Shown here one piece after another: positions 29,561 to 56,161 of a stretch of 64,000 nt of DNA. Every line of letters begins with the position of its first letter. Position 1 is the stretch's first letter. A model generated the notes under the pieces. The model was not told where the DNA came from. It saw only the letters and a list, made by a program, of their open reading frames with translations, and ran no database searches. The translations under genes and the position numbers were made by a program. This stretch comes from Oculina patagonica (taxonomy: Eukaryota): positions 33,294,001-33,358,000 of the forward strand of contig NC_135763.1 of NCBI RefSeq assembly GCF_052425735.1. The letters run 5' to 3'.

Positions 29561-30777
29561 TGAGAAATAGCCGAGGTGGAGGTGAAGGTGAAGTCTTTGG
29601 TCGACATGTTGCAATGCAACACTGCAGTATTATAAAGCTTGGCTTAGCATTGCATTCGATTCGGAGAAACGAGATTTCAGTTTAAATAAAGGGTATGTGT
29701 CGATCGTTTTTAATTTCTACATAAAGATTTATCTTTACAATCAGTTTTAGTGGATAAGTCTCAGTACCTATAAAACAAATTTATTTTTATTTTGTAAATA
29801 AATACAGCACCTCTGCGATTAAGTTTAAATCCTTTATTAGGCAATGCCCACATTGGGTAACAAAAATATTTCTTCTTAAATTAATTTTATAATTGCATAA
29901 CTGGCAGTACATCTTACGCGATAACAAAATAATAGCAGTTGGAAGTTGGGAAAATGTACGAAAAAAGCGCAAGAAGATTCGATAGGAGAGGGTGCATTAC
30001 TTCTTCTTCGCACGGATTTGCTTCTTCCCCGCTATTATTCTGCAAATGCGCGCGAAGAACTCACAGTTATGCTGTAATTGATGTTAGGGAATCGTAAAAC
30101 AGATTTTTATTAAATAAAAGACAATAGATGTATGACCAAGGTTCAAACAACTCCTTAGCATTCTTTTTTCACTGAGCGCATCTCTCTCTTGGCCATTCTT
30201 CTTGCCTTGGTGAATGTCATCACTAGTCGAAGGCTTTCATCTGTGCGAGAAAGAAAAGTTGAACAATTACAGTTAGATCGCCTGGCGATGCAACCTCAAA
30301 AAAGAGAACAACCGAAGCTAACTTTGCACTCAGATCTTCACTTATGTCCAGGATTGAACGCAGGTATTGTTTAATGAGTACTTCATGTTTGAATGTGTTA
30401 TTTGGCATTTCCATATTACTTCATATTTGACAGATTTTAGTGTGTTTTGGTAAACTTTTATTAATGAGGACACTTTGTGATGCCTGTCATGAGGAACGAG
30501 CATCTCATTTGCGTTCAATCCTGGACATATCTGCAGATCTTATGTCACCTCGGTAATAGTGCGAAGGGAGATCTGGGTACGAGGTTAAACTGGGTTGTCA
30601 GGGTTGGTGCCTGGCCCGCGCAACAATATGTAATCCATGTACCTCAAGCACGATTGCACAAACCCATCGTTGCAACTAGATCGAATGTTGCCTTAAAGTA
30701 CCATCAAATTTTATTAACTCATATAAACAGCAAACAGCTAGAAAAATGAAATGACAACTCCTTACCATTAGAGTTTT

Positions 30778-31034
30778 TTAATGGTGTCCTTTTCCCTTGT
30801 GTTCGCCTTCTTTGCCCTTCGCACATTGCTGATCATTACATGGCTCCGCAGGCATGGGATCAAACACGACAGTCTGACTGACATTAGGAACGTCAAACTG
30901 TGACGTCACAGACGTTGTGCCTGGTCCTTGCATGGTGACGCCCACATTATTGGAGTCCATTTGTCCAAACACCTTTTGTGGCTTGCCTGCGTTGCTAAGG
31001 AAAACCTTATGCCCATTGCTCACTGCTTCTTCTT
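30778..31034 (-). CDS. Gene D last coding exon: module copy 2, CNDQQC, His/Lys end
   Basis: HKVFLSNAGKPQKVFGQMDSNNVGVTMQGPGTTSVTSQFDVPNVSQTVVFDP...HKGKGHH*. Confidence 0.85.
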
Positions 31035-34000
31035 CTGTTTGGGTTAACAACATTATAAAAAGTTATTATATAATAGCATTGTTTTTTGACCTGTCAGAGT
31101 ATATTAAAGCCCAAATACTTCATCTGTGCCTTCCCCAACTCCACGCACTTTGTACCGGTTAATCTCAAATTCAACCCTAGCAGAATCTGACTCGTGTGAT
31201 GTTTTTTTTTTTCAAAGCTGAAAAGAATTCTTACAGCGTAGGCAAGTCTTCTCAAGGGATGGTATTCTTAGGTCTCTACATCACAAGACCACATGCTAAA
31301 ACTACGTAATTCAGAAACAAATAACGTTCGATTCTGTTCTCGTGTTAAAAAAGGCTACTAAGGTCTTGAGGTGTTATTGGGGTTGGTCACAAAAGTAGCA
31401 CGCGGGGTGTCATAGATGTCACCCGTTTGCAGCATTGCCGGTAAATGTTGTTGCGAAATCGAACTCTGTTGAAGGTCGTGTAGGGGCGGATCTAGGGGTA
31501 ACGGTGCAGGGGGTGTTAACCACCACCCCTTGAGATGACCTGCAGCTTTCTAATTATAATACAAATGATATTCTGCAAAAAACGCCATTCCTTAGTGGTG
31601 AACTTCCTCCTGAGAAAAATCCTGGATCCGCCCCTGTCGTGCGATCTATCATCCTAATAGATCAATTTGAACAATGCAAAAATAAAGATTCACGGTGGCA
31701 TCAAATCTGTGAAAGTTTTACTCACTTTTTGGTGTATGGGCTACTACAGGTATAGTGCTCTCCAGATTTGTTATTATTTTGTTGGCGTGTTCCTTGTTCA
31801 CGTGAGTGTGTACATGAACCTTCCCGTTATCAGCGTGTTCAGCGGGTGCATGCACATGCGCATGCTCTACCTTAGGTTGTGGCTTTGTGTGCAGCTTTGC
31901 AGGCTCCTTTGGTTGTACTGGAGGCTTCAGGTCATGGTGGTTGGATTCTTTAGGTGCCTGTAATGGTGTTGCTGGTCCGGTTAGAGGAAGAGGCATAGGA
32001 AGTTGGTGACCTGAAGAGAAAACCAAACATTTCAGTTAAGATTGTAACGCGCCATGTACGTAAGTGCAGTGATTACCCAGACTAAGTAAAAACAGCTTTG
32101 GTGCCCTTTTTTAAAGTGATTTTTATTCGTGGAGTAAATTTAAAACCAAAGTAATCACTCTGGCCAATCACAAAGGACACGGACAGCCCAGTGATTCAAC
32201 CAAAATTCGAAGCAAATACATGTAGCCGGTGCGAGGCACGAGAAAACGAGTGTAAGTGAGCCATGACTGATTTTGGTTTTACTTCTGACTGGTCGAGAAA
32301 GTGGCGCGAGTTTTTTTAAGACCAATCATTTAGCGTAGTAATGCAAAACCAAAGAAAACGCGAATTAGTTTAGACACTCAAGTGAAAGCTACTCTGTTAT
32401 CCTGTAATGCATTGCCTGATTCATTCGTGAATTTGGTTCAGTCGTAGACATGTAATCACTTCAATTGTTTGTTACCCAGTTGAAAGCTATTTTCAATGAA
32501 AGCTTGTCCTGCCTGAGACATAAGTTCAAACCATAGCCAAGACTGGCTATAGGATGGGAATAATAATGATATAAATCATCCAAAGATCAATTTTATTTTA
32601 AAATTTGTTTAAAGAATTGTGATACTATAGGAATAGGAAAGAATATAAGTAAACGATCTTTGCGAACGATTAATCAAGACCAACCCACCCCCTCACCCAT
32701 CCAATCCTGCACGCTACCCCCACCTCCCACCCCTCTCCCCAAAAAATGTATCTAAGACGCTGTATTTTTTCTTTACCTGAATGAACATTTACCGAGCTGC
32801 ATTCTGGTCCATTACATCCCCCAGTGTCCTTCACCATAGTAACGGTATGATCTGGCTTGGGTTCATCAGGCCCCACTACCTGCTGGGTAGTGTCCAATGA
32901 GACCGACCCGGGACCTTGCATGGACACAGACACGCTGTGCGGACCTATGTGACCAGACACCTTGTTGTCCGCCATCTTTTGCACATGGACATTGTACACG
33001 TTCAAATCTTGAGGGCCTGCTGGAGCGTCGGCGAATGGTTGGTTAGTTGCGGGTTGTTGGTAGAAGGCCTTTGGATCTTCATTTCCGTGATTTTCTACGT
33101 GAGCTGTAGAGAGATAGACATCCGGAATCGAATAAAATTCAGTGAAAATTTTAAAGGAGAAGTTCACTCCAGAGTGGCCATTTATTTTCTTTACGCCAAG
33201 ATATGTTTTCACCACAATTTCAGCCTCTAACGTTCGCTATAACCCTACGAAATCTTTCCCAAAACTCGACAACTGAACGCCGCCATCTTGAAACTGGTAA
33301 TGTATGCGTGACGTCAAAGAGTTCAGCCTGAAGTTTGGCGGGAAAAGTTTTAATAGTCAAACTCCTTGTGTTTTGTATTTCTTGGAGCTCTGTTTGAGCA
33401 AAATGGAGATGCACAAACAGGCATTTTGACAAACAAAGGCCACTACGAAGAATCAAAGAGTTTAGAGTATTTAAATTTTCCCGCCAAACTTCAGGCTAAG
33501 CTCTTTAACGTCACGCATACATTTCCAGCTCCAAGATGGCGGCGTTCAGTTGTTGAGTTTTGGGAAAGATTTCGTAGGGTTATAGCGCACGTTGGAGGCT
33601 GAAATTTTGGTGGAAAATATATCTTTGTGTAAACTTTTTAATTGGCGTAAAGAAAATAAATGGCCATTCTGGAGTGAACTTCTCCTTTAACGAAACCCAT
33701 ATCGCACCAATGCACGAAAACGCCCCTAAGGAAACCACTTCCAGATATTTTTTTCAGAGGATGCATACTTAAATCCAAGGTTAAAGGTTAACCTAGATTA
33801 TATTGAGGTCTATATTCTCTCTGGTTTAAAAGCGTTTTTTTTTTCCTGCTAATTCAGTCAATTAAAATTGTGAGCAATGAGGCATTTTTCTTAGGCAAGG
33901 TAAGCCGAGTCCACTAAAACTTTTTTATCCTACTTTGGACAAGTAAGCTAAAGCGAGAATAGGTCTCTTTACCTTATTCCCTCAAACTAAGACAACATGA

Positions 34001-37000
34001 AGCACAATTAAACTCCTTTGTTTTTATAAATGTTCAGTGTTGTTATGACTGACCTCCTATATATATGAAAATTTACCTTATTGTTACATTTTTTCGCGGG
34101 AACTTAATTTCGCGAAAATGGAACGGACATACACCGATTTCACAAATGGCGGACGCGCGGAAAAAAACTGGTACGAGGCATGAAAACGAGGCGTTTTAGG
34201 ATAAACAGCTTTCGTGTTACAAGGGGAAAAGTGAAAATTACGCGAGTTCTGAAGTTTTTGTTTGTTAAACGGGTAAATAGGCCGTTTTCCTTCCAGGTTT
34301 TCGAGATTACGGAATTCTAAACGAGTTTACAGTCTAGTAATTATTCTTGTTTCTGTGTTGCAAGAAGAAAGGGACCGTAGATCTGCAGGAAAACAGAGTT
34401 AAAGTTTTGGTTTTCCAATAAGGAGCTTCGACGGCTGTTGGCCGGTAAAAATTTACACGGCACGGTATTGAAATTAATTTTCAAACTCTGTCAAGGTACG
34501 TTTTTTCCAGACGCTGTTAAGGTATGTTCTTTTCACTTTTGTGAAAGCAAACGAAAAATTCTAACTCTGTCTCCTTGAAGATTTAGTAGAGCACGAACTC
34601 TGGCTTTGGAATAGGAACTTTACAAGTCAACATTCAACTTTGAGCCACCTTGACCGGTCACATTTCCTTTAAACAAATTTCAATTACTATTATTCTCTCG
34701 CTATTAAATTATTTTTATACTTCGCAAAACACCTTTGCTGTGCTATGGCAAATCGTTAAAATGTTGACAAATACTGTAATAAATTTAAAGACGAAGCCCA
34801 AGACTACTGGTATTGAATTCTAATGGTATGTTTCTTCTTTGCAATAAACCCTTATATTTGTAAATACTTGATTGATGAATAAAAATCGCTTCCAATAATC
34901 TCAGCTTTATATAAATTAAAAAGGAGGGCATCTTCATTCACGGTGTCCTGTAAAAGCTTGTAAAATGAAGCGAAACCGTGAATATTTGTTCTATCAGTTG
35001 GACCTTCGTCGTGGTTGCCTAGCACGTGATTAATTTCTTCCCGAGATCGAACAACTTCAGTCGTCCGACACAGCAGAAGGAATTCCAGCAGGTTTCACTA
35101 AATTTACAGAATTAATAGCATTGTTTTTGACTTGAGGAACATTGTGATGATCTTGTTCACTGACTGAGATTGTGTTCAACATTTACTGTCCGCTTCACTT
35201 AATGTAACTCCTTTGGTTTGCGTGGAGCCAAGTGATGTTTTATGTTTAATCGAATTAGCCGTTTTAGTCTGTCTGAATTATTTGAATACCGGCAATTTTT
35301 TTTCTAAAATGCAAGAATCTACTAGCCTACTAAGTCAAAAAAAAAAAAACTACTAAGTCGATTGAGAATAACACATTTTTATTGATGCATTTCAGGTACG
35401 TATGGTATCACGTATGGTTATTTTACCAGAAAAAAATAAAGAAACCGGCCCGAAAATCCATTGTTACACATTTTTTTCACAACGTACATGTATGTTTACA
35501 CAGACAATTGCGTGTTTATTTTCGTAATTCTTCAATGACTTACCAAAATCCTTAAGAAAATGTGTACACTCGTCTGGATACCGGAGCTTTCTTGATAAAA
35601 GTCCGAGGTTTAAAATCGTTGGCGACCCACCGTATTTCAAGCCATGTGAAACCCAGGGTTTTGCTTACAACCCGAAACAAAATAACATTATTTGGCCGCG
35701 AACTTATTTCGAACTCGGTAATCTCGAAATCAACCTAGAAAACGAGCTAATACCCCCATATAACGGAGGAGAGCTTCAAAACTCCTGTAATTTTCACTTT
35801 TCCCCTTGTATAAACACGAAAGTTGTTTATCCTAAAACGCCTCGTTTTCATGCTTCAGTACCAGTTCTTTTCCGCGCGTCCGCCATTTGTGAAATCGGTG
35901 TATATTTCGCGAAACTTAATTTTCGCGATTTGGCCAAAAAGAGGGGTTAAAACAAAAAATACAACAAAAAATGTAAGTAACAGTAAGGTAGTCTTAGAAG
36001 AATCTCGTATTTCTATTAACTAATTAAGTTACCCGGGGACAACTCATGCCTTTTTTTTCTCTTCTTTCCAAATTTGTAAAAAAAAAAAGTAAGTATTATG
36101 TCAATCGTATATTATTTTTTAATTAATTTTGGTTTATTTTTTGGAGAAACGTTTTAAAACACTTAATCAATCAAAAGTGTTTTTTTGCTTTTTTCCCGCG
36201 AGGGCTACTTGTGTGACTTGTGTGTGAGAACTGAGAAAACAGTTCAACAGGTGGCCACATCTCCTTGACATGAATCAATGAACAATGGTCTTAAAACCAT
36301 GAAAACAAAATGACAGTTTTCTTCTTTTAAATCCTCTCTTCACCGCCTCCATTGTGGCTTAATTACTTGGTATAAGACAAGAAATAAATTTCACGATGTT
36401 GATGGACGTTTGATTAAGACACAACTGACTTTGTGCTGTCTTCGTCTGTACGCTCGAATGATAAACAAGTTCTAGTCAAAACACATTCTTTCCGATTCAT
36501 TATATAAGCAACAACATACAACAGGAAACAAATTAATGTAAGTGTGTTTCGTGTTTTTCGATTTTACTTTCCGAACATCAGCATAGAACATCCTTAATAT
36601 GTTTTTAAGCCCTTTAAATAAAAGTGACAATAGAAAGCAAGGGACCGCGGACGAAAATGCAGCTAGTGTATGTAGGAGCTGGCGACAGCTCTAAACAGTT
36701 ATCTTGTCTCTTTAAATAAACTTGACTTATTTATCGTTCAAGAGCTTGCGTGTATAGATATATCACATTTTTCAAGAATCTCCAAATAAAAATTTACCAA
36801 GAATTTAATTAGCACTTGTCGATTTAAGTCCTTGGAACGTTAAACATACGTCAATCGATCGTTCTCCCCGCGGCTTTTGTCAATAAACAATACACTACTG
36901 TGTTTCTGTGTTTCTGGAATATATACGTACCGTGTTTGTGTTTGTGGTGCCGTGGCCTTCCCTCAACCAGAACTCCTGCCATACAAATCAACAAAATAAA

Positions 37001-37012
37001 ATAACGAGACAT
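30778..37012 (-). CDS. Gene D: His-rich secreted protein with two copies of an uncharacterised 'V(S/T)MQGPG' module; about 316 aa
   Basis: Join (minus): 36931-37012, 32777-33103, 31726-32010, 30778-31034 (TAA). All phase 1. 3'UTR intron 30241-30765; AATAAA at 30106-30111. Confidence 0.85.
31481..31636. mobile_element. Short TIR element (aggggcggatc..gatccgcccct)
   Basis: taggggcggatctagg / cctggatccgcccctg; tcgtg on both flanks. Confidence 0.6.
31726..32010 (-). CDS. Gene D exon: Pro/His/Lys-rich
   Basis: ...VEHAHVHAPAEHADNGKVHVHTHVNKEH...; ttcag/ and /gtgagt; 285 nt. Confidence 0.85.
32120..32395 (+). repeat. Interspersed repeat; inverted second copy at about 59820-60098
   Basis: aaaccaaagtaatcactctggccaatcac...gaagcaaatacatgtagc...aatgcaaaaccaaag matches the reverse complement of 59820-60098. 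Confidence 0.7.
32777..33103 (-). CDS. Gene D exon: module copy 1, CNGPEC
   Basis: NVYNVHVQKMADNKVSGHIGPHSVSVSMQGPGSVSLDTTQQVVGPD; 327 nt. Confidence 0.85.
33155..33686. mobile_element. Foldback MITE with TTAA TSD and AGG..CCT termini (Kolobok-like)
   Basis: ttaa|aggagaagttcactccagagtggccatttattttctttacgccaa ... ttggcgtaaagaaaataaatggccattctggagtgaacttctcct|ttaa; arms about 210 bp. Confidence 0.85.
34076..35988. mobile_element. Outer TA-flanked MITE (tttcgcg repeats), split by an inner insertion
   Basis: ta|ccttattgttacattttt ... aaaaatgtaagtaacagtaagg|ta. Confidence 0.6.
34132..35900. mobile_element. Inner 1.77-kb non-autonomous DNA transposon with about 115-bp TIRs
   Basis: ta|caccgatttcacaaatggcggacgcgcggaaaaa ... 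ttttccgcgcgtccgccatttgtgaaatcggtg|ta; no long ORF inside. Confidence 0.8.
36931..37012 (-). CDS. Gene D first coding exon: signal peptide plus His/Lys N-terminus
   Basis: aaaATG, MSRYFILLICMAGVLVEG/RPRHHKHKH, /gtacgt. Confidence 0.88.
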
Positions 37013-37862
37013 TTTATCGCGAGAGGAACCGACAACTACCGTGTGGTTTAGCGTCACCGGCTTCAGCCGTTTTCAGTGATAAAATATTCTTTTTGTTGCC
37101 GACCGAATGACCCGACCAATACGACATCACTTAATTATTCCATAGCTAAAATGCTTGTGCTATAATTTTGTCGCGTTTATCTGACCCGCTAAGTGCCCAT
37201 GCTAAATGCCCGTGAGGTCATCGCCTTTAAACTGTTACCCACTAAAACTCAAACTGATGCACAATTACTTTGAGGGCAGAACCCACTTGAGAAATTTCTA
37301 TTTATATTTCAAAAGTCTTTTTTGAATTCTTTTAAAGCTCGCATATAATGGAGTGTTACTTATACTAGTTCCAAACACATGTCCGGTGTACAAAAATGTA
37401 CCCGTTTCAGTGGACTGAATCAAGTATGTTTACTCGTTAATTAGTGCCGCGAGAGACTCTTCAGACCTTGCGATTTTTCCTAGAATCAGCCGCCATTTTG
37501 GCTCTAGAAGGCAAACACGGATCGATAAATTCTTGACGTGCATCAAATGTAAAAAATGTAAAACATGCCCATGCCACGCTCAAGATCATAGGGGTTTGTT
37601 TTTTGTGAATTCATCTTTACCAGCTCCTTGCATTGAAGACCAAGGTACAGATATTCGAGACAGGCGAAGGCCTTTCCCTTCTTCTCGCTCCAGTTATTTG
37701 CGCCTGGGTCAGTTCAAGTAGGAACCTGTGACTTTGGCAGCAGGGGGTCAAAACTCCAATGGGAAGGTCTTTAAGCAATAAAGACTTAGATGCCGGGCAT
37801 AACGCCGAAATAAAATGAGAAGTACTTTTGGAATTTTGTAGAACCATTCACTGTGTCTCTAA

Positions 37863-38116
37863 TGGGTGGCGCGGTGGCCTAATGGTTAGTGCGCCGGACT
37901 CCGGATCGAGTGTTCCGAGTTCGAGCCCCGACGGGGGCACTTGTGTTGTGTTCTTGGGCAAGACAATTTACTCTCATAGTGCCTCTCTCCACCCACGTGT
38001 ATAAATGGGTAACGGCGACATAATGCTGGGGGGGGGGAACCCCGCTTAATGCTACGGAAACCGGGATTAGCTCCGGCAGTGTGGGCCGCTTGACTCGTGG
38101 CTTCTCCTTCCTTTCT
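37863..38116 (+). mobile_element. Full-length tRNA-derived SINE with a 17-bp TSD
   Basis: Box A tggcctaatgg, box B gttcgagcc; TSD attcactgtgtctctaa at 37846-37862 and 38117-38133. Confidence 0.88.
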
Positions 38117-39019
38117 ATTCACTGTGTCTCTAAAAATTTGCCTTCATAGTGAATGTTTTCCCAAATAATCAGAATTTCGTAATTTTTACGATGATGTTTT
38201 TCAGAGAACGTACATCTCAAATGTATGACACACGTGCAAAACCTGTTGTCCCGCTTATTATTACCATGGCCGCTGTGTGTTATTCATCGTTGACAAAGCT
38301 ATAACTAAGCCTCGTTATCAAATCGAGTCAAGGCTATCTACTCCATTACTGAAAGGTACTCGGAGGTCTCGAAGTCTCTATTTCAAGTTTATTAATTGAC
38401 TTTGCTGGTGTCGCAGAATCTTTTCTTCCACGAATTCCGTTTACTCTTTCACTGGTTCTGTGTACCAGCATTTCGACGTCTCGAACTACCCTTTCTAGTT
38501 TGGGTGCGTTTACACTTAATCGCCTCGTTATAAAAATGGGTCGACAAAAGCTACTACAGAATGAGTTCCGAAATCTCTATCAAGTTTGCAATTTGACTTT
38601 GCTTGCGACCAGGAATCTTCAAGTGATTTGGTGAGAGTCACTCAGCGGGCTGTATTAAAATTAACACCGCTAACAAATAAAGTAGTAATCAATTGAATGG
38701 TTCTTTGAAAACAAGAGAAAAACTCGCGTGTTCACACTAGTTAGAAACTTTATTGATTGACTTCATTAGGCAGGTTTAATTAACAATCGTTTCAGTGAAT
38801 ACCCTCTATGTTTTTTTATACTTATGCATAGGGAACTGACCCGGCGTTTTATAGCTGCAGTGTAGTAATAATAATGTGAACAGGTCTATTAGTTTGCCTG
38901 CGGTCTTGTGTCATCTTGAGGCCTTGACAGCGCAAAAGCTTTTCTTCAGGCGACTTTCAAACGCCATTGGCTATCAGTTGGCACCTGAACTTCAGAGGAT
39001 GGACTCCTGGCTCATCTAT

Positions 39020-42000
39020 TTACCACTGATTCCCTCTGTAAGGAGTTTGTCTTGGGAAAATTTATGGTTAATAGATGAAACAAGAGATGTTATTCTGGAT
39101 AAATAAAGTTTTGAACGCGCTTGAAAAAAACGGTCTTTAAAGAAACAGCCTTTTCACTAATGAAAATCCCCACATCAAAACACAGGTACACTAATTCATT
39201 TTATGTTCACATTATAATTGTCCTACAATATAGAACGATTAGTTTTCCGTGATATACGTGCAATTTACTTCTTTTAAACAATATTGCATGCTTTGAGCTA
39301 CTCGTAATTACCTTAATTACACTACATTGAAAAAAATGTATTATGATTCGAGAAAATTAATTAAGGTACTTTAGAGGAGCAAAGGTATGGATGATGTATC
39401 TCGTTCGAAGGAAGGTTAGAACTTAATTGTTACCTCTTTGATGTTCAGTTTACTTTGGTAAACTTTTAAGAATGAAGGTTGAACTATTAAGTTTGGCAAA
39501 CCATTTAGTTTGAAGATTGATTCATCATTAGGATAACTTCATGGAATGGCTAGAGTGGCTCTATTTATTATGTTATCTTTCAATTTCCTTAACTGACTTA
39601 ATTTAAAACTTTGTACGACTGCAAGTGAGCTCGACGATCTAACAGGCGTAAAAGACAACGAAACATAAATGCAGAATTATGCACGTTAATGGTCACGAGT
39701 AGATAGAAATCTAATGGTTTTTGATGCAGGCCCTAGAACGTAAATTTCCCAAATAATCATTTTTTTTTTTTCTTTTCACTTGGAGTGGAATGGCAAAAAG
39801 TTGCTCTTTAAGTGAACAAACGAACATACAGTGTAAACTGTTATCGAGCAAAATAAAAAAAAATTGGAACATAAAAATAAACTTAAAGCTATATAGTTAT
39901 TAGCAAGCTAAGTATAGAGCAAAAACAATAAAAATTTAGGTTTCCGTTACAAACCTTATTAAACATGACAAAATAATTTTAGTAGCAACGAAAGCGAGGG
40001 AAATAATTAAGATTTATTTGAATGTCACACAAAAGGGTTCCTTACAGCTAGAAGCGCATCTTGACTGTGGGAGTGAGAGTTTTAACCAACTTGAGCGCTT
40101 TGTTGATACAGAAAATATTCCTACATGATCCTATTCCTACATGACAGTTTATTTCAGGTAGTCTGTTCAGGGTCTTAGATCATGAAAAACTGAACAGCCA
40201 TTCTAAAAATCGCTTGATTTTGTTAGTCAACTGACAATGTTAACAAGACAATACATGCATCGAGTCTAGCTTATGTCAAGATTCCCGAGATTTAAGAGCC
40301 TGGAACAGACAGTTATTTTAGATTAAAGGTTGTGGTTATAACTGAAACAAACTAATTTATTTACGTTCTTGGTCTTTACTTTGAACAAAGCTTGCACTTG
40401 AGCCTGCAGTTAGTCATCAGCCATTGCTCTCTACAGCGGTCATCAGGGTAAATTCTGCATACGCTATCATCAGTACAAGTTTGAGGCACTGCTAAATTGA
40501 AGAAAAAAATTAAAAACGGTAAAACAACTGTATTAACTGAAACCAAAAGGCATAATGGCAGTTTCATTGATAGGCTGGTTTAAGTGAGAAAACTTAACAG
40601 ACCAGGTGAATCAAAATAATTAATTAATTCGACCCATTCAGCAGATGTTAATTAACCATTACCCTGCGTAATCGCGGAATATCGCCTGATACTTAGCCGA
40701 GCGGCTAAAATTAGACGATATTCCAAAAGATTGAGCAAGATAATTGTTTTATTATTCACCAATTTTTCATGGAGGACATTTTGCAGCTAGAAAAACTATG
40801 GTTATGCAGCGCTTTAGAAGACTTCGAACAAATCTTGGCAGCCTATATTTATCGCAGGATATCGGTTATGTTCGGATGACAGATAACGATAACATTTTGA
40901 CCATATATGGGCAACGCACGCATGTTTTTTGCAAAGGTCTTAGCCAACACAACATCTAATGAAGACTTACAAAAATTTAAAGATAGTTAAAAATAAAGTA
41001 TTATAAAATCGACATATTATCTTACCACTGCTGTAGGCTGCAGGTGCTGGTGGAGCCGGGGCAAGAGGAGCCGGCTGCGAGTAAACTGGGGCGACCGGAG
41101 CAGCCTGAGCAGAGGGCTGGGTCTGAGGAGCGGCTTGGTAAGTATTGACTGTATTCTGAGGAGCGGCTGACGCTTGTGTCTGTGGAGCGGCCTGTTTTTG
41201 TGTTGAAGTAGTTGCATTTTTCTCTGCTACATCCTGGGAGGTTGACTGCTTAGGTGCTTTTTGGGAAGACGCTGAATCCGTTGCATTCTGGGAAGTTGAT
41301 GGCTGGGAGGCGGCTTCATCTTGGTGCTTGGCTTGTTTATCTGTGAATGAAAAATCAATTACGTTATTGCATATCACTTCAGAGTTATTAACTTTGTTCT
41401 GGGGACCACTACGTTTATAAACGTAGGATATATAAACAGTCAACAAAGTTTTGTAGTTTATACTTGAGGGGAGTGGCTATTTTCAGGGAAATGGTTACTT
41501 TATAAGATGTCCAGAAGATCTCGGAAATTAAGATAGAACCATATTAGGCACATGATCATACCTTCAGAATTCGTATCAGACTTCTGTGCCGCATTCTCTA
41601 CGACTACCTGCCCCTTAGATACTTTCATCATCTCCTTATGATTACCCTCGATGACTTCCACGCTTGGCTTGGACGCGAACTTGACGCCTTTCTCAGGTAC
41701 ATCAATCTCAATATTCTCGATCAGGGGCTTGGTGACGTTTTGCTTCAGCACCATCAAAGGTTTCACGAATCCTTTGGTGGAATTGCCCTTTGGTGGCATG
41801 ATGCGGATTTCTTGGATCTGTGGTACGCCATCTTTCAATTTCGGTTTCACTCGGATTGTGTATTTTGCCTCCAGAGGTTTGGGACCCGAAGCAGGAGCGA
41901 CTAGGTCCGCCTGAAGCTCGGTGACATCCGGAGCATCGTCGGCACTCTCTGTGGCATTCTTCAGTTCAGGATCCGTGGCATTAACACCTTCGTCTTTGGT

Positions 42001-43666
42001 AAGTTAAAAGAAGTTTGTTTCATTCGACATTCGATTAACAATATTGTAAATTAAACAGGATGATGCACCCATAGCGCAGAATGCATGGACATCATTTATT
42101 ATTCAGAATCAGTGAAGCGGTAAATTTGAACTCGAAAGCGCCCACAAGTGTTGATAAAACTTGCTTCTCTATGAGTTAAAGAAGTAAAAATCTTACAACC
42201 CACGCGCAGATTTTTGAAGAGGAATGTTGTAGCTACATTTCTAGCTATAGGCAAAAACGAAGAAGATTGAACATCAAAATTAATGTTTTTTGCACTTGAA
42301 AATACAGTAAAATTCAATTACTTCAGCGTGGGTCGGAAAGGCACAAGGCATTGACCGTTCCAAAGACTAGGAAAGGAGACGGGTCGAGTAGTTTGTGACT
42401 TCTTTTATTTTTTGTGAAAGATAAGTTTGCGTTTTGAGCCTAGTAAGAGCTTATCTCTGGTTTAAGTACCGTGAAACGACAAGGAGTATTTCCCCGGGTA
42501 AAGTAACGAGTCGCAGGCTGCCCCCCCCCCCCCCCCCCGAGTATTTACTTGCCCGGTGCCCTTATACAAGGTTTGATTTGCAATCCGACTTTCGGGAAAA
42601 TATATTCGACTGATCACTTTAATCCTATTTCCCTTTCAGTCTCTTCTCCTTGCTGTGAGGATCAATCTGCCATTCATTAATTATTGCTGTCCCCGCTTAA
42701 TTACAACAAGAATGGCGAACACTGAATTTAGCAGCAAGGGATTTTAAGAAACAAGCTAAATGGCTTTCGAAGGATTCTCTAGACTTAAAAATTTGCTCTA
42801 AAAATATGTAAGTTATGCTCTGTGGGAATAAACCTTAGTAGGACAAAAATCCTTTTTCGTTTAAAAACAAATAACCAAGCTTTTTTATGCTTGCAACAGG
42901 TGCTGGTGTGAAACTCGACACGCATGATCAGATGTTATGAAATTTGCGAGCGAAAAATGTGAGGAATTCCCTTTGTCTAAACTCTCCAAGTTATAACTAG
43001 AAAGTAAAATTTTAACACAAATCTAGGTTCCTTCCAAATTTTGCTGTTTTCTTCAACATAATTAACCACTTTCAGCAAAAGTCCAAGCTTTCTCTTGAAA
43101 TCATCGGTAAATCTCTATTCACTATTAAATTTGAAAAACTATATCCTTTAAACTGACGAGGCTGTCGATACACTGATTTTAACTGCGGCGGCAGTTTTAA
43201 TACATCTCTTTAGCAGGGCGGGTCGAATTTAAAGTCTATTCTTCTTGTTCACCGAAACAAGAAAAACCTTTGATCGGCGTGACCCTAAGTTTCGCGCACA
43301 CCCGATAAGCCAAGTTCGGAACTTAGGATGACTAATGTCCTCTTGCCTCTTGTTTAGCAATTTGGTCGCAGCATTTAATCGCATTTTTCAAATTTGTCCT
43401 AATTCTGATCCTATCCGCTAGTTCATGTGCGACGTTCTTTGCGTATGCCTCACTTAACGGGTTATTTTTGTTTAAATTCTTGAGCTCTTAAGGTAACTTA
43501 CAAAACTGACCCGTTGAAAACATGTTATGGTGTCGTGTCCAAATTATTTTGACTTCAAAACTGGTAAACCAACTGAACAAATTCCACACTTACCTCGAAT
43601 AACCCTTTGAATATTTCTACCCTCGATCGTCGCGAAGCAGATAAACAAGAGCGCAAATTTCAACAT
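39020..43666 (-). CDS. Gene C: secreted protein, SP - 'KP' beta module - Q/A/S/P-rich - ShKT; about 315 aa; paralog of the 3' half of gene B
   Basis: Join (minus): 43594-43666, 41562-41993, 41026-41340, 40380-40491, 39020-39035 (GNQW*). Alternatively ends at the TAA at 40376-40378. AATAAA at 38749-38754. Confidence 0.83.
40380..40491 (-). CDS. Gene C exon: ShKT domain
   Basis: CTDDSVCRIYPDDRCREQWLMTNCRLKCKLC; tandem tagcag acceptor. Confidence 0.9.
41026..41340 (-). CDS. Gene C exon: Q/A/S/P low-complexity region
   Basis: DKQAKHQDEAASQPSTSQ...APAAYSS; 315 nt. Confidence 0.85.
41562..41993 (-). CDS. Gene C exon: uncharacterised 'KP' beta-rich domain
   Basis: KPLEAKYTIRVKPKLKDGVPQIQEIRIMPP...KPLIENIEIDVP...KPSVEVIEG; 432 nt. 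Confidence 0.88.
43594..43666 (-). CDS. Gene C first coding exon: signal peptide
   Basis: aaaATG, MLKFALLFICFATIEG/RNIQRVIR, /gtaagt phase 1. Confidence 0.85.
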
Positions 43667-45139
43667 TTTGTTAAGGAGTAAAAATCGTTCTGTTTGTGGA
43701 TAATGGATTTCTTCGCCAAATGCGCGGTTGAAGATGTCAGGTCACGAAAATTTTAGAAAGCTTTTTAGTTCGACTGGTGACCTTTCTGCTTAATGAGCTG
43801 GAAAAATTTCATTGTTACTTTGAAAGGTCTTCTAGTTGTATATTATGGTTTTCACTAGCAAAAATAAGCTCATAGCCAGTAGAATTCAACATGAAAGTTG
43901 CTAAAACCGCCAGGCTCAGGAAAAAAACGTAGACGCAATTCCACATTTTTAATTAACTCAATTTCGTTCTGCGAAAATATATTAACGATAGAATTAGCAA
44001 TAATTTCAAATAAAGGGTGTTATTAATTCCGCGAATTGTAGGGTTTGGGGGAACAACTTATTGCAAGTAGCGTCCTGTATCAGGGGTATATAGGGTTCTG
44101 AAAACGATTTCAGAAAATTTCTAGGGCGTCAATAATAACTAACTCAACTCTGACTTATAAACAAGGCCTCATTTTAACAGCTTGCAAGCTCTTACTGGTA
44201 TGTAAACTTACTGCAGGGCTAGAAGGGAAAATCAGCGAGTGTCACTGTCGCCTTGTTTAACACTCGAGGATTTGTCAACGACGCGTGCTTATAAAATGTC
44301 GCGTAATTCAACTGCAAAGTCGTTTACATAGGGTGATCTTTTATTTAAAGAATAAACATGCATTTCACAAGCAATAAAGACTTTACCAAATCCAAAAATA
44401 TAACATTCATAGAATAGCTTGTGTTCGATTTATAATGGCCTCGTTTCACTAATTAATACTGACTACTATATATCAATCTTAAAGTAAATTAATAGAGTAC
44501 CGAAGCGCTATTTTATCGGTAGACAACGGTATACGTCCGTTTCCCTAAGCTAAGAAACTAAGAAAAATAAACCACAGCTAGCCTCCTAATAGGAGTAAAT
44601 TAAAGTTAAATCTATTCTACTGCAGCATCGAAATCGAAATCCACATAGCAGACTCTGAGTTGTCAATTGAACTTGCCATGAGTTGACGTGACATGAACTT
44701 CAAGTTTTGACTTCACGCAGGAGCCGGGTAATGTGCTCCTGATTCATGTAAGAAGTAATTGTTATCTACAAGTCTAGAAATTAGCTGCTTCTGGTGGATC
44801 ACGTGACTGAACGTAGTGAGCAGTCGTGTCTAAAACCTGAGAAAGAGTAGAAAACAAAAATTAGCATTTATGCTTGGTTTGTGAAGGCTCATGATCAGAA
44901 ACTGTTTCCCATCCATTCCCCCTTCCCCCTCCCCCACCACCACTAACACCTCCTCCGATCTCCCTCATTACTTCCTATGCATTTTTTTATTTCATAGCAT
45001 TCGAAATTGAACAACTTCAAAAATGTAGTTTATATTCTTTCATGCCTTCCGACTTATATTTATAACAAAGTTTGCAAATGCTCTGGCAATGGTTCATGTT
45101 TACTTTACTTTACATACAAAACCAGGCGTACCTTTTTAT

Positions 45140-45243
45140 TTAACACAGTTTACACATGCTCTTGCAGTTGGCCATCAGCCATGGGTCTGCACAGCGGTCA
45201 GCGGTATATGGTGCGCATCTGCCGTCATCAGTGCAGGTTTCAG
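45140..45243 (-). CDS. Gene B last coding exon: ShKT domain 3
   Basis: ETCTDDGRCAPYTADRCADPWLMANCKSMCKLC*. Confidence 0.9.
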
Positions 45244-46827
45244 CTGCGAACAAAAGACAAATTGGAGAATAATTAGAAAGTTTATCCAAAGTTATGTATT
45301 TGGTGATTTACAAGGACATAGCTGATCAGAAGCTGAGAGCTGAGGTACATCCAAATACATCTACAGCTACGCATAGAAAACAAATGTTCCTCTAGTTTTA
45401 ATTGAAAGACTTGCCAAAGAATTTGGAACCATTTGACTTTTTTAACTTAAAGACCAGCTACATGTGTCATTTGTGTATATCATAGGGATTTTAACGACAT
45501 ACTTTTAGTATAATTATCACAATTTAAAGATTGTAATCATGGGTGTATTAATTAGTTTTAGTGTGGTGGTTTAAAGCATCTGTACATTATTATACTTTTA
45601 CTCATAATAATATCGTAATTTACTTTTTAATAGTTAATGATTTATTATCTATTTAATTTCTCTTTGTTTTTATACTTGATTTTAATTACTGTCGTGCGCT
45701 TTATACATGAGCCTCTGGCTCGGATAGGGAGGGCAACCTCATCCCGCGTTATGTCTCTNNNNNNNNNNNNNNNNNNNNNNNNNNNNNNNNNNNNNNNNNN
45801 NNNNNNNNNNNNNNNNNNNNNNNNNNNNNNNNNNNNNNNNNNNNNNNNNNNNNNNNNNNNNNNNNNNNNNNNNNNNNNNNNNNNNNNNNNNNNNNNNNNN
45901 NNNNNNNNNNNNNNNNNNNNNNNNNNNNNNNNNNNNNNNNNNNNNNNNNNNNNNNNNNNNNNNNNAAGACTTACTGTTGGTATAGGCAGCGGTCTGGGTG
46001 GCTGAAGCATCAGGTTGAGCAACTGGGGCAGCAGCGGACTGATCTGTTGTAGCAGCAGCGGCCTCGGTAGCTGGAGCGGTGGTCTGTGCTGCGGTTGCAT
46101 CCGTCTGGGTCGCTGTAGCATCAGCCTGAGTTGCTGTAGCAGCGGTTTGTGCAGCCTGCGTGTCCCATGGAGACTGGGTCTGTGTGTCGGAGTGATATGA
46201 AGCTGTGTCCTGGGGAGCGGCTTGTGTGGTGGCAGAGGAGGACTCGGTCTGATCGGTGGCGGTCTGATCGGTGGCGGGTTGAGCGGCAGAGTCTTGTTCA
46301 GGCTTGGTTTCTTTGATTTCTTTTTTCGAGTATAAAAAATAGGTGATTTTGTAACAAGGGTAATTGGGGAATACCTGAAAGCAACCTTTAGACTCTGAAA
46401 GCGACGTAGACGAGTACTGCATGCAATGTTGTGTTTGTCTCATTCAAATGGTACACTAGGGAATGAAATAAATGCGACTTTGGAGTGGAGGTCAGAGGGG
46501 AGGAGAAGAACATGTCGACCAAAAACAACGTAGAGGAGGATGGATCGAACAGCTGGGTGACAAAGGAGGGACTGAATCGAAAGGCTGAAAGGAGAATATC
46601 AAAGCTATATTGTCTTATGGCATAGGGAGATCTAGGTGTAGGTAGGAAAAGTGAGGTTTGTATAAGATTAGAGGTTTTTGTTTGGAGCCTCTTTTGTTTG
46701 TTATTCACTTCCGCGTCGCTGCAGTAGTTTCCAGTTTCCATAACTGAGCTGGCCTTTCCTATAAGCCTGGTGGTTTCTTGGAGGTCTCCTCTCTACTACT
46801 GTTATATTACTGTTATATGCTAATAAA

Positions 46828-46874
<47 letters not shown>

Positions 46875-49800
46875 GATGAGTTTCCTTAGAAACTAATCAC
46901 ATGCATGATAAAATAACTAAGGCATACCTTCAGACTTTGTCTTGGACTTCTGTACCGCGGGATCCTCCACAATCGCTTGTCCTTTACTCACTGTCAGCAT
47001 CTCTGTGTGATCTCCTTCGATGACCTCCACGCTTGGCTTTGAGCTGAATTTTGCACCCTTTGGTGGGACATCGATTTCAATATTCTCAATCATAGGCTTG
47101 GTGATATTTTGCTTGAGTACCATCAGTGGTTTAACATATCCGGCGGTTCCAGCCTTGTTTGGAGGCATGATCCGGATCTCCTGTGTTTGTGGCACACCAT
47201 TCAACAGTTTTGGCTTTACTCGGAGAGTGTATTTGGCTACCAGTGGTTTTCTTCCAGGGGCCGGTGCCACTAAATTGGACTCTAGCTCTGAGGTCTCCGT
47301 GAGGCTCTTCACCTCATTCGGGTAAATCTCCGTGGTCTGTGTCGCTGTAGCGTTCTGTTGGTCCTTGGCTGTAAAATAAGTTAAAAAGAAACGGGTTTAG
47401 ACATTCATTTCCTTGTTGAATAGTCATGGAACTGACACGGTTTGTACATGATACAAACAGCGTATTGCGTATCGAGCCCCTCGTCGCTTCCGATGAATGG
47501 CCATCAGACCGGCCTTATTGGCCTTGCGGCGTATGTATTGCATAAAAAATGTCATTGCTCTTCAATATTTGTTTTTGAAGGAATGATATTTGAGAGTTTT
47601 TTACGTGCAAAAACCTCACTACACGCAATCAATCAATCTGTTAGTTGTCTGTAAAAAAAATGCTGCTCAAGGTCAAGAAGACATCATTTATTGTTTGAGG
47701 TAGTTGCATGGTTAATGCCTCTCTGGATCTACCACTGCTGGCCATAGACAGACAGCCTCCCTATTGATGACTAGTTAGACAACACAGGTTTTCAAGTTAG
47801 TCCGGTTTTGATCATAAAACTCTTGTAAGCAGTTGAACCCAATTGCCTTACCCTTGCAGAGGTTGCATCTCTTAGGACAATTAATCTGCCACCAGGTGTC
47901 GTTACAGTTGGAGTATCCGTAGGCACAATCTTTGTACAAGTCATCGCAGTAGACATTAAACACATAGGGCACTGTAGACGAAAAGTAGTAAAAAGTAGAA
48001 TGCATGGATCAATTTTAGTGGAAAGAACCTAATGTGTTAGACATAAGTGCCAAACGGTACGATTTAATGACAACTCGGCACACAATTTAAGGTGGCTGAT
48101 AACTGTTTTCAATAATTTACAGACCTTATACTTCGATGGGTCAGTTCTAAAACACTTTATCAACTAACATTACAGAAATGGTATGAAACAAATGCCCTAT
48201 CACTGGTCGACAAGTTGTGATCATTTTCTTGACTGGAAAATGCCTAAAACCGTTCTCAGTCACCTTAAATGGATCTACAAAACCTTTGCTAGATCGGAGC
48301 TTTTCTCTTTCTCTCTTGCTTGCTTGGTCGCTTTTCCTACTAGTAAGAATTCTTCATTACAATACCGTGAAAGTATGGAGAAGGGAATTTTCTACAGGCA
48401 GAATCATATCCCCCGTCTTCCATCAACGTAGGCCCCATGCGTGGGGTGAATGCGTGACAAAAGAGGTACTTACATGGCGGTGCCTTTGCCAGGTCGGGAC
48501 ATTTCTTGCAACCTTCTGGCCTTGGTTGTTTTTTGCAACATGTCCAGCTGTAATCCGACTGCTCAGGCTGATCCAGTCCTCCTGCTTGTGGATCTACTGT
48601 CACATCTTGGCTAAAAGACTGTCCTGTAGACGTCAAATCCACGGTACCTGCACCGGACAAAGTCACACTCGCGCCGTTAGGGTTAAATCTTCCTTGCATC
48701 TTACTTGACTCTTCCGAATTGACAAGATGAAGTCTGTGCTCAGAAGTTACCTCTTCTTGTGATAGGTGGAATGGTGGCAGAGATGAGACGCTCGAAGATG
48801 ATTCTAGTGATTCATCTTTAGATGGTTTGTCTTGGTGCAGCCCGGATATGCCAAGTGAAGACAATATCGTTTGTGGATTGGATTGATTTTGTGCGAGTGC
48901 TGGTGTTTCTGTCTGATTTTGCAGTGTTTGTGTTAATGAAGAATTCTGTGACAGAGACGCGTTCTGTGAAAATGACGAATTCTGTGATAATGACGAATTC
49001 TGTGACAGCTGCTCTACCAGTGACTGATTTTGTGAAGTGATGTTACCTTGTGCAAGAAAAATATGAACATCTTGTTTCTACTCATTAACTAACATTATGT
49101 CAATAATGAAGTGCACTAACTATAATATGACGAACCACCCAAATTCTCAAAATCAGCGTTCAACACGGAGGTGTATTTTATAAAAAAATGTTTCGTAAAA
49201 AGCTCAGAGTAGATGGCTGTTCATTTAACATGGGAACAAATCATAGTAGGGGAAGAACCGCCAGTTCCGCAGATTAGAGAATTGACAAAGTTCCGTCTCA
49301 GCAAAAATCAGCACTTGATCAGTTTTTACTAGAAAGTGCCATTGTTGTATGAAACTACAGTAAAATGCCTTTTGCTTAATTCTTGAGATCAAACAACTAA
49401 TTGTTTAGCGTCCATGTTTTGGACTTATACAACATTACCTGGTGCAACAGTCTGGTTGGAGGTGTTATTTGCTCCAGCAAATGCTCCAACCATGATGGTT
49501 TGATTTGTTTGGCTCACATTAGCCACGGCTGGTTCAAAGGTGTTATTAGTCGCCAGTGACACTGTCTGATTGATCAGTTGGATGGTCTCATTTGCGGCAG
49601 CTTCTGGTTGAGCAGCCACAGCTTGTTGGGCTGCAACAGGTGCTGCAGGCTGCTGAACAGCGGCGGCAGCAGCCTGTCCCACTTGAGGTACCGCTGGGTT
49701 AGCTGCTGCAGCGACAGCCGGAGCTGCCACTGCAGGCGCAGCTGGTTGGGCAGCTGCGAATGCAGCTGTTGCCTGAGACGCACCTTGAGCTTCAGGTGTA

Positions 49801-54518: not shown

Positions 54519-54680
54519 NNNNNNNNNNNNNNNNNNNNNNNNNNNNNNNNNNNNNNNNNNNNNNNNNNNNNNNNNNNNNNNNNNNNNNNNNNNNNNNNNN
54601 NNNNNNNNNNNNNNNNNNNNNNNNNNNNNNNNNNNNNNNNNNNNNNNNNNNNNNNNNNNNNNNNNNNNNNNNNNNNNNNN
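54519..54680. other. Assembly gap (N run)
   Basis: Ns. Confidence 1.
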
Positions 54681-54854
54681 CAGTAAATCTTTATTGTGCC
54701 TTACACTCCAAAGGGAGGTATTGGTCTAGTTACAATAAAGGTGTTATAGCAACTATGCTAACAAAATTAATTACTTAATAACAAACAATGAAATTACAAT
54801 GCAAACGTTTACGGTAATTATTGGACTATTACTTATACAACTATTACTTAACTA

Positions 54855-54928
54855 CTGACTGACTGACTGACTGACTGACTGACTGACTGACTGACTGACT
54901 GACTGACTGACTGACTGACTGACTGACT
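54855..54928. repeat. (CTGA)n microsatellite
   Basis: About 18 perfect units. Confidence 0.95.
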
Positions 54929-55819
54929 TAGAAACCTAAATTCCACGTACGCTTGGCCATTTTCCTTTAAAAATAGCTTAAGATTTGGACGCTTTTATGT
55001 CTGTTGGTAATGAAGTCCACAGCATTTCTCCTCTACATGAACGTAGTCCAGACAGACAGACGGACAGATAGAAGGACGAACAGACAGAAGAACCGTCGCA
55101 CGGACGAGCACATATTAAAATAGAGCTGGAGATCTGATAGAATTTACTTCATAGGCAACTGAGGTATGTGAGACGACAGACTTATTAATTCTCTTTACAG
55201 CCAATACGAGTCGCTAATAAAAAGATAAACTCTTCAGCGAGGGACGTTGTCTTGTTGCAACACTTAATTCTGCAAACTAGCATTGAAAGTAAAGTAAAGC
55301 AATCTACGAGAGTAATTGTGTTGGGATGAAAATACGAGTTACATGACAAGGTGACATAAAAGATAAAAAGTGAATATAAAACACAGCATTAATGGAAGTA
55401 CGATATACACTTTATTAAATAAAAGCTTTATTTCGGCGTATTACAGGATCTGTAGCATGCATATTCAAAACTCAAAGTTTTTAATTAAGTTGCCACCTGA
55501 AAAAAGAAAGAATAACAAAATATTGCATTGAGAAATACTGCATAAATAACCTCAATGGTCATTCTAGCATTACTGCCGAATCAGTTGTCTAGTTTAAAGC
55601 AATTTCTGTTTGTGTCTCAAATTAAACCACCTACAAAACTAAGGAACTTTACTTAGCAAAAAGTACTTGATGAATAATGAATACGTAATTTTTATCCAAC
55701 TATTTGAAAGGAATCAGAGGAATTTATTTTCAGGTTAATGATCTAGAGGAAACTCCTTCAGTTCATTAAAAGGAGACACTTCTTGCTTTTAATAAATTCA
55801 ATTTTACAGCTTTTTTGGC

Positions 55820-56161
55820 TTAGTGGCCCTTTGTCTTTGGCTTGTCGTGTTCAGTTTGCACTTTCTTAATTTGTTTGACTTTCTTTTCGATTTTATCATT
55901 GTTCACTTTCTTGGCCACTTTCTTCTGCACAACTTTTGGCTTTGCATCCTTCACGAGCTTCACGTGCATCGCCTTCCCGGGAGCGTCGTTAAACTTGATT
56001 GGCTGGTTGACCAGCTTAGCGACCACGGGCTCGCCTCCTGGGTCCGTGTCAAGTCTGATTGGCTTGTCTGGTTTGTCCTCACTCTTGACTTCCCCTGAAG
56101 CTTTATCGTCATCGTCATCATCTTCATCTTCATCATGTGAGCTTCCTTCTCCACTAACATC
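55820..56161 (-). CDS. Gene A last coding exon: acidic SG site, duplicated PIx..PG..KLV motif, Lys-rich tail
   Basis: DVSGEGSSHDEDEDDDDDDKASGE...KPIRLDTDPGGEPVVAKLVNQPIKFNDAPGKAMHVKLVKD...KTKGH*. Confidence 0.87.
   Translation of the reverse strand, partial: DVSGEGSSHDEDEDDDDDDKASGEVKSEDKPDKPIRLDTDPGGEPVVAKLVNQPIKFNDAPGKAMHVKLVKDAKPKVVQKKVAKKVNNDKIEKKVKQIKKVQTEHDKPKTKGH

What the first reader, a model, noticed from the sequence alone, without database searches (positions are those of the whole stretch)
30856..48753. Second unrecognised module (K-x2-G-x7-V[ST][ML]xG[PA]G) in three copies across genes D and B
Hand alignment. D copy 1 (about 32864-33003): NVYNVHVQKMADNKVSGHIGPHSVSVSMQGPGSVSLDTTQQVVGPD. 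D copy 2 (30856-31028): GHKVFLSNAGKPQKVFGQMDSNNVGVTMQGPGTTSVTSQFDVPNVSQTVVFDP. B (48589-48753): EHRLHLVNSEESSKMQGRFNPNGASVTLSGAGTVDLTSTGQSFSQDVTVDP. Spacing from K-x-x-G to GxG is identical in all three. Each copy is followed by a short Cys motif (CNGPEC, CNDQQC, CCKKQPRPEGCKKC). This ties gene D, which has no ShKT, into the cluster. Inference: a beta-meander interaction module, possibly cross-linked through the trailing cysteines.
Basis: partly seen in the sequence, partly recalled or inferred. Interest (0 to 1): 0.8.

Follow-up and report, generated by a model that had tools for sequence, protein, structure and literature searches.

The report
Coral-only beta-sheet module, three copies
Two neighbouring secreted-protein genes of a stony coral share a real, conserved 60-75-residue beta-sheet module that matches no known protein family or fold; its function is still unknown.

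Summary
All three peptides are encoded on the minus strand at about the stated places. Their similarity beats shuffled controls (0 of 5000 for each pair). Orthologue profiles of the three types match each other (hhalign probability 97.3, 97.5 and 91.8 %).

It occurs three times in the window's six-frame translation, against 4e-5 expected. A profile search finds only these three copies in the 529-Mb genome.

Spliced transcript contigs put D1 and D2 in one mRNA. The resulting 316-aa His-rich secreted protein contains the entry 'hypothetical protein ACROYT_G023490 [Oculina patagonica]'. Orthologues exist in Montipora and in unnamed coral contigs, and gene order is conserved.

Pfam, PDB sequences and four fold libraries give no match. 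AlphaFold2 predicts an amphipathic five-strand antiparallel meander (core pLDDT 84-86) in an otherwise disordered protein.

The beta-meander reading is therefore supported. 'Interaction module cross-linked by cysteines' remains inference, because the one complex test gave no answer.

The assembly gap lies in gene B's Thr/Ala/Gln-rich exon and touches no copy.

Verdict: a new stony-coral domain family of moderate interest.

The parts
36931..37012 (-). Gene D exon 1: start codon, 18-residue signal peptide and basic His/Lys-rich start of the mature protein. The donor is G|GTACGT, phase 1.
   Evidence: ORF and donor read. Orthologues P0073, P0069 and P0070 start with the same signal peptide followed by GRPRHHKHK. 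The annotated entry P0072 starts at an internal Met 10 codons downstream of this start. The junction itself was not seen in reads; transcript contigs only show that at least 70 more bases lie upstream of 33104.
32777..33103 (-). Gene D exon 2 (327 nt, phase 1-1). It carries module copy D1 and the CNGPEC motif.
   Evidence: Splice joint 32008/32775 (shifted by 2 to GT..AG) seen in contigs of three runs. The acceptor is CTACAG at 33104.
32784..33011 (-). Module copy D1 (residues 49-124 of P0072), six predicted strands.
   Evidence: HMM hit, full-length AlphaFold2 model with pLDDT about 70-75, D1-type alignment A3.
31726..32010 (-). Gene D exon 3 (285 nt, phase 1-1): Pro/His/Lys-rich disordered linker plus one conserved short helix.
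   Evidence: Joints 32008/32775 and 31034/31726 lie in one contig, X4 record 22. pLDDT is below 50 except for helix 199-210.
30766..31034 (-). Gene D exon 4: module copy D2, the C-x4-C loop and the stop codon at 30778-30780. A 3'-UTR intron follows (30241-30765).
   Evidence: Joints seen in contigs of X2 and X4; translation.
30823..31023 (-). Module copy D2 plus its invariant C-x4-C (residues 226-292 of P0072).
   Evidence: HMM hit. AlphaFold2 gives five strands with core pLDDT 84-86. D2-type alignment A4.
48474..49046 (-). Gene B module exon (573 nt, phase 1-1 by consensus sites): an Asn-x-Ser/Thr-rich stretch, then the module, then the four-Cys motif ending at KAPP.
   Evidence: Acceptor AG and donor GTAAGT read. 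Orthologue ORFs diverge directly after KAPP. There is no read evidence for this exon.
48589..48759 (-). Module copy B.
   Evidence: B-type alignment A5.
48475..48546 (-). B-type trailing motif W-T-C-C-x9-C-x2-C-P..PKAPP, invariant in six orthologues.
45759..45965 (.). Assembly gap inside gene B's Thr/Ala/Gln-rich exon. It is not part of any module copy.

Best explanation
Shown: the three stretches are paralogous copies of one conserved extracellular protein module of about 60-75 residues. It is found only in sequences that are, or look like, stony-coral sequences. Gene D encodes a 316-aa, His-rich (9.4 %), mostly disordered secreted protein with two copies, D1 and D2. [quoted passage not shown] Each D copy sits in its own exon, as does B's by predicted splice sites; the internal ones (D1, B) are phase 1-1.

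Predicted: each copy forms one antiparallel beta-meander. Hydrophobic residues lie at every second position of each strand, so one face is greasy and the other is polar (His/Lys/Asn/Thr/Ser/Gln). An invariant G-P-G turn joins strands 3 and 4.

Inferred: a single amphipathic sheet cannot stand alone. The module most likely works by packing its hydrophobic face against a second sheet. In D this would be D1 against D2. In B it would be another B chain or a D module. That would tie these proteins together in a secreted matrix or mucus layer, with the adjacent small Cys motifs forming local loops or inter-chain disulfides.
For: Homology:
- Shuffle test, 0 of 5000 for each pair; BLASTP; profile-profile probabilities 92-97 %.
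- Only three copies in the window and in the genome.
- In a tree, the D1 and B types are each one branch (support 100/99 and 99/99). The copies therefore arose before the sampled corals diverged.

One gene, expressed:
- A single spliced contig links D1, the linker and D2. All joints are GT..AG and are absent from run X15, whose kind is not recorded but whose contigs run unbroken through the 31035-31725 intron.
- The spliced model contains P0072, 'hypothetical protein ACROYT_G023490 [Oculina patagonica]'.

Conservation:
- Orthologues with two copies exist in Montipora foliosa and M. capricornis (XP_068696708, XP_068757249) and in seven further clusters.
- Mean identity to the Oculina D protein across its orthologues is 0.54-0.63 in the modules and 0.30-0.40 in the linkers.
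- The exon order of B and the C-D adjacency recur in other coral contigs.

Structure:
- AlphaFold2 on 26 sequences gives five strands, mean pLDDT 75.7, core 84-86.
- In the full-length model only the two modules and one helix are ordered.
- Strict i/i+2 hydrophobic alternation in all five strands.
- pTM 0.44 with 54 % of the chain disordered, and structural alignments that span both modules, hint that D1 and D2 touch in the model.
Against: - No experiment and no successful computation shows binding. The complex job gave no answer because the chains did not fold.
- Model confidence is moderate, and flat meanders are a common over-prediction for beta-prone sequence.
- I could not inspect model coordinates, so D1-D2 contact is indirect inference.
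- The Cys motif after D1 is missing in Montipora-type orthologues.
- Tissue and cell type of expression are unknown.
Confidence: 0.55

Rival explanations
1. The module is a shortened, diverged remnant of a PKD or Ig-like beta-sandwich domain (the K319L-like PKD type), not a new family.
For: The top non-family hit of the profile search is a bacterial protein with 13 K319L-like PKD repeats. hhalign of the module profile against those repeats gives probability 68 %, E 4.8e-5, over 34 columns. These cover the first two strands, N-A-G-x2-Q-K ... V-T-L-x-G. Other weak hits are also Ig-like: antibody light chains at E 0.2-1.8 and a PKD-domain protein at rank 4 in AlphaFold DB.
Against: The PKD protein was picked after the fact from 1.8 billion proteins, and it scores only about 10 bits per repeat. 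No member hits any PKD Pfam model even at E 10. The module is 20-30 residues shorter than a PKD domain and lacks the conserved Trp-containing second half. No fold search gives TM above 0.31 to an Ig-like, filamin or PKD structure.
Confidence: 0.12
2. The flat polar face (Thr/Ser/Gln/Asn/His) binds a non-protein surface, either aragonite or skeletal organic matrix polysaccharide. On this reading the cluster encodes calicoblast-secreted biomineralisation proteins.
For: Neighbouring gene A combines ShKT domains with long Asp-rich runs. [quoted passage not shown] Every homologue that carries an organism name is from a stony coral, Oculina or Montipora; the rest are unnamed. D is His-rich.
Against: No link between that Stylophora protein and genes A-D could be tested. 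The Oculina skeletal proteome tables hold no sequences to compare. Whether non-calcifying anthozoans lack the module is unknown, because most hits are unnamed contigs.
Confidence: 0.2
3. The stretch is not an autonomous domain. It would be a beta-prone segment that becomes ordered only in a higher-order cross-beta or fibrous assembly.
For: No compact fold match in any library. The predicted form is a single sheet with no second layer. The rest of D is disordered.
Against: Position-specific conservation of polar residues (His, Lys, Asn, Asp-Pro) and of loop lengths across types fits a defined fold better than a generic amyloid-like segment.
Confidence: 0.1
4. The similarity is chance or a low-complexity artefact.
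For: B vs D1 alone is not significant by BLASTP. B alone does not retrieve D from the whole genome at E 0.01.
Against: together with conservation of each type across species.
Confidence: 0.02

Closest known systems
Hypothetical protein ACROYT_G023490 [Oculina patagonica]; uncharacterized proteins XP_068696708 (Montipora foliosa) and XP_068757249 (M. capricornis)
   Same: The first is the gene D product itself, identical over 306 residues. The Montipora proteins are two-module orthologues at 38-41 % identity.
   Different: These are database entries only, with no domain annotation, name or function. The Oculina model starts at an internal Met and lacks most of the signal peptide.
K319L-like PKD domain (PF22352) and PKD domains (PF00801, PF18911)
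   Same: Weak likeness of strands 2-3 of the module to the first two PKD strands (hhalign 68 %). Both are extracellular beta modules.
   Different: No Pfam hit, a shorter length, no second half of the PKD sandwich, and no structural match.
[quoted passage not shown]
   Same: Gene B has the same overall design: Ser/Thr/Gln-rich glycosylated stretches flanked by ShKT domains.
   Different: This concerns the host protein, not the module. No such module is described in those proteins, and orthology to the Stylophora protein could not be tested here.

Membership tests
PKD / K319L-like PKD domain (Pfam PF00801, PF18911, PF22352) | Match to the family HMM at or near the gathering score | tested here: not met
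   None of the 26 module sequences hits any PKD model even at E 10; the exon translations also hit nothing.
PKD / K319L-like PKD domain (Pfam PF00801, PF18911, PF22352) | Beta-sandwich of about 85 residues and seven strands | tested here: not met
   The AlphaFold2 model is a five-strand meander. Best Foldseek TM to a PKD-domain protein is 0.23 and to filamin repeats 0.27-0.31. Best VIA Z is 2.5.
PKD / K319L-like PKD domain (Pfam PF00801, PF18911, PF22352) | Profile-profile similarity over the whole domain | tested here: inconclusive
   hhalign probability 68 % over only 34 of 91 PKD columns, against a repeat protein chosen after the fact.
ShKT domain (the cluster's recognised domain) | Six-Cys pattern C..C..C..C..C-x2-C | tested here: not met
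   The module core has no Cys. The ShKT patterns lie in separate exons (50694-50470, 48008-47778, 45307-45143). Gene D has none.
Immunoglobulin V-type domains | Significant sequence or fold match | tested here: not met
   Best PDB sequence hits are antibody light chains at E 0.2-1.8, with no single stretch passing. No fold match.
The coral module family defined here (alignment A7) | K-x2-G-x8-V[ST][ML]xG[PA]G core with five alternating-hydrophobic strands, in secreted proteins | tested here: met
   All three window copies and 23 orthologous copies align without gaps in the core. Gly41 is invariant; Gly43 and Pro42 are nearly so.

The most novel reading that the evidence does not exclude
The module is a new protein fold that arose in the stony-coral lineage. 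It would assemble a His-rich protein and a ShKT mucin into the calicoblast-secreted organic matrix on which the aragonite skeleton forms. That would make it a lineage-specific building block of coral calcification.
Probability: 0.12. Interest if true: 0.7.

Novelty: categorically new. Interest (0 to 1): 0.45.

Why it matters
Stony corals carry many lineage-restricted secreted proteins whose roles in mucus, matrix and skeleton formation are unknown. This work defines one such family precisely:
- a corrected gene model for D;
- a domain alignment usable as an HMM seed;
- a predicted structure;
- a conserved three-gene neighbourhood (B, C, D).

These give a concrete handle for localisation and binding experiments. 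If the module proves to be an assembly unit of the skeletal or mucus matrix, it would be a coral-specific structural innovation. If not, it is one more domain of unknown function.

Tried and rejected
- Pfam on all exon translations and on 26 module sequences: nothing.
- PDB sequence profile search: nothing below E 0.2.
- Fold searches with the module model: PDB Foldseek best E 2.9; AlphaFold DB clusters best E 0.046 with TM 0.29; VIA-align wide best Z 2.5; ESM Atlas TM at most 0.50, to unrelated bacterial hypotheticals.
- Fold searches with the full-length D model: best Z 2.9 and TM at most 0.14.
- ESM Atlas feature search: no usable hit.
- Complex prediction with D1 against D2: no answer, because the chains were not folded (pLDDT about 37). 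This is no evidence either way.
- A fourth genomic hit on another contig (E 0.55) translates to unrelated sequence and was rejected.
- Literature: the locus-tag prefix and XP_022806382 lead to nothing usable. The Oculina skeletal proteome supplement has no sequences.
- I could not obtain a full-length gene B protein as a query, because the length filters exclude exon pieces. Orthology of B, C or A to the Stylophora calicoblast ShK mucin is therefore untested.
- The idea that D's C-terminus is an amidated cyclic peptide precursor was dropped, because the G-K-R site is not conserved.
Full report
**1. The observation**

BLASTP gives E 7e-8 for B against D2 (34 % identity over 59 residues) and E 6e-5 for D1 against D2. 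B against D1 is not significant.

A local-alignment shuffle test on the roughly 55-residue stretches gave 0 of 5000 shuffles reaching the observed score for every pair. The Gumbel p values were 1.7e-8, 7.5e-5 and 1.8e-6.

The x8 pattern hits exactly these three places in the six-frame translation of the window, where composition predicts 3.7e-5 hits.

HMMs built from the three copies, and later from 26 copies, find only these three in the window and in the whole 529-Mb assembly. A fourth hit at E 0.55 is unrelated sequence.

**2. The assembly gap**

The N run at 45759-45965 lies in the Thr/Ala/Gln-rich exon of gene B, about 2.6 kb downstream of the B copy on the coding strand. That reading frame runs straight into the gap. 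On the far side no frame continues it, and all three frames meet stops within about 40 codons.

The end of that exon is therefore hidden, and continuity or frame across the gap cannot be shown. None of the three module copies depends on it.

**3. Gene structure**

Contigs of three transcript-like public runs carry the following joints on the minus strand:
- 32008/32775, which shifts by 2 to a GT..AG intron at 32011-32776;
- 31034/31726;
- 30240/30766.

One contig (X4 record 22) runs through the D1 exon, the middle exon and the D2 exon. A fourth run (X15, kind not recorded), whose contigs run unbroken through the 31035-31725 intron, lacks the joints. D1 and D2 are therefore parts of one expressed mRNA.

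With a signal-peptide exon at 37012-36931 (donor G|GTACGT, phase 1), the coding sequence is 951 nt and encodes 316 residues. Its last 306 residues are identical to the database entry 'hypothetical protein ACROYT_G023490 [Oculina patagonica]' (P0072). The window is thus from that coral or something indistinguishable from it. The deposited model starts at an internal Met; orthologues confirm the longer signal peptide.

The D1 exon (327 nt) and the linker exon (285 nt) are both phase 1-1.

For gene B, the module exon is predicted from consensus sites as 49046-48474. It is 573 nt, phase 1-1, with donor GTAAGT directly after KAPP. Orthologue ORFs lose similarity exactly there. I had no read evidence left for this exon.

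On the same strand, gene B also has:
- ShKT exons at 50694-50470, 48008-47778 and 45307-45143;
- the 'KP' domain exon at 47396-46920;
- low-complexity exons dense in Asn-x-Ser/Thr sequons.

**4. Relatives**

A profile of the three copies, searched against 1.84 billion representative proteins, returned 34 hits. About 25 of them are true family members.

Named members are 'uncharacterized protein' XP_068696708 of Montipora foliosa and XP_068757249 of M. capricornis. Both are 357 aa with two modules. Further full-length D orthologues (278-361 aa) and many exon-sized ORFs come from unnamed coral-type contigs.

Separate alignments of the D1, D2 and B types from other species match each other by hhalign:
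- D1-D2: probability 97.3 %, E 1.8e-11;
- B-D2: probability 97.5 %, E 5e-12;
- B-D1: probability 91.8 %, E 7e-7.

In a maximum-likelihood tree the D1 type and the B type are each one branch, with support 100/99 and 99/99. D2 is the unresolved remainder next to B. The three copies therefore arose before the sampled corals diverged. Those corals include Montipora and Oculina, which by my own knowledge fall on the two sides of the deep complex/robust split of Scleractinia.

Gene order is kept:
- One foreign contig has a B orthologue with the same exon order: ShKT, low complexity, module, ShKT, KP, low complexity, ShKT.
- Another has a C orthologue followed by a D orthologue with D1 and D2 exons.

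Across D orthologues, mean identity to the Oculina D protein is 0.54 (D1) and 0.63 (D2), against 0.30-0.40 in the linkers.

**5. What it is not**

- No exon translation and none of the 26 module sequences hits Pfam, even at E 10.
- A profile search of all PDB sequences gives nothing better than E 0.2, to antibody light chains.
- The highest-scoring non-family protein in the big search is a bacterial protein with 13 K319L-like PKD repeats. hhalign of the module against those repeats gives 68 % probability over 34 columns, corresponding to the first two PKD strands.

I treat the PKD likeness as a lead only, for three reasons. The protein was selected after the fact and scores about 10 bits per repeat. 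The module lacks the second half of a PKD domain. No structural search supports it.

**6. Predicted structure**

AlphaFold2 on the 26-sequence alignment, with D2 as target, gives five consecutive antiparallel strands. Mean pLDDT is 75.7, the core is 84-86 and pTM is 0.55.

In the full-length D model only residues 49-124 (six strands), residues 230-279 (five strands) and a short conserved helix are ordered. The remaining 54 % of the chain is below pLDDT 50.

In the alignment, hydrophobic residues occupy every second position of each strand. The intervening positions are His, Lys, Asn, Thr, Ser or Gln, and the G-P-G turn is invariant. The predicted sheet is therefore amphipathic.

No library contains a convincing match:
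- Module model: PDB Foldseek E at least 2.9; AlphaFold DB clusters E at least 0.046 with TM at most 0.45; VIA-align Z at most 2.5; ESM Atlas TM at most 0.50.
- Full-length model: Z at most 2.9.

Two indirect hints suggest D1 and D2 are packed together in the full-length model. The pTM is 0.44 despite more than half the chain being disordered. The weak structural alignments also draw residues from both modules onto single compact domains. I could not inspect coordinates.

**7. Mechanism**

Shown: a conserved, expressed, taxonomically restricted module in two neighbouring secreted proteins.

Predicted: an amphipathic beta-meander.

Inferred: such a sheet needs a partner. The module most likely pairs with another copy, D1 with D2 inside D, and B with B or with D. 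This would knit a His-rich disordered protein and a glycosylated ShKT mucin into a secreted layer.

The Cys motifs are conserved after D2 (C-x4-C) and after B (W-T-C-C-x9-C-x2-C). The one after D1 is missing in Montipora-type orthologues. Cross-linking is therefore possible for D2 and B but is not a general property of the module.

The one complex prediction allowed could not fold the chains and gives no information.

Which secreted layer is involved (mucus, extracellular matrix or skeletal organic matrix) is open. A biomineralisation role is suggested only by context: an Asp-rich ShKT gene next door, and a literature report of a ShK mucin in calicoblasts (PMC8913943).

**8. Verdict**

The interaction and cross-link reading remains a reasonable but untested inference.

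The module matches no known family by sequence or predicted fold, so I class it as new. An orphan domain in lineage-restricted cnidarian secreted proteins is not very surprising, so I score interest as moderate.

Noticed in passing
window 55823-59264, minus strand: Gene A has two ShKT exons (59264-59064, 58431-58210). They are followed by exons with long Asp-rich runs and Lys-rich stretches (56992-56477, 56188-55823). This is an acid-rich secreted protein design reminiscent of coral acid-rich skeletal proteins.
   Followed up: no
window 46920-47396 and 41503-42003, minus strand; L006 13421-13924; L007 391-861: The Cys-free 'KP' domain of genes B and C is very well conserved in other coral contigs (E 7.8e-67 and 1.1e-44). 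It has no Pfam match either.
   Followed up: partly
window 36931-37012, minus strand: The deposited Oculina gene D model starts at an internal Met. The likely true start lies 10 codons upstream and adds most of the signal peptide.
   Followed up: yes
window 30241-30765, minus strand: Gene D has an intron in its 3' UTR. It starts 12 bases after the stop codon and was seen in a spliced contig of run X2.
   Followed up: partly
window 30200-30600, 32000-32400, 33200-34200: Stretches inside gene D's introns have contig depths in the thousands to hundreds of thousands, with many loose ends. They are probably high-copy transposable elements.
   Followed up: no
window 48760-49046 and 49428-50396, minus strand: Gene B's low-complexity exons are packed with Asn-x-Ser/Thr sequons (for example repeated Q-N-S-S-L-S) and Ala/Gln-rich runs. 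This suggests very heavy glycosylation.
   Followed up: no
window 57816-58197 and 54851-54994, minus strand; gap 54519-54680: Tandem-repeat DNA gives repetitive ORFs (M-S-C-H-V and S-V-S-Q units) near gene A. A second assembly gap lies close by.
   Followed up: no
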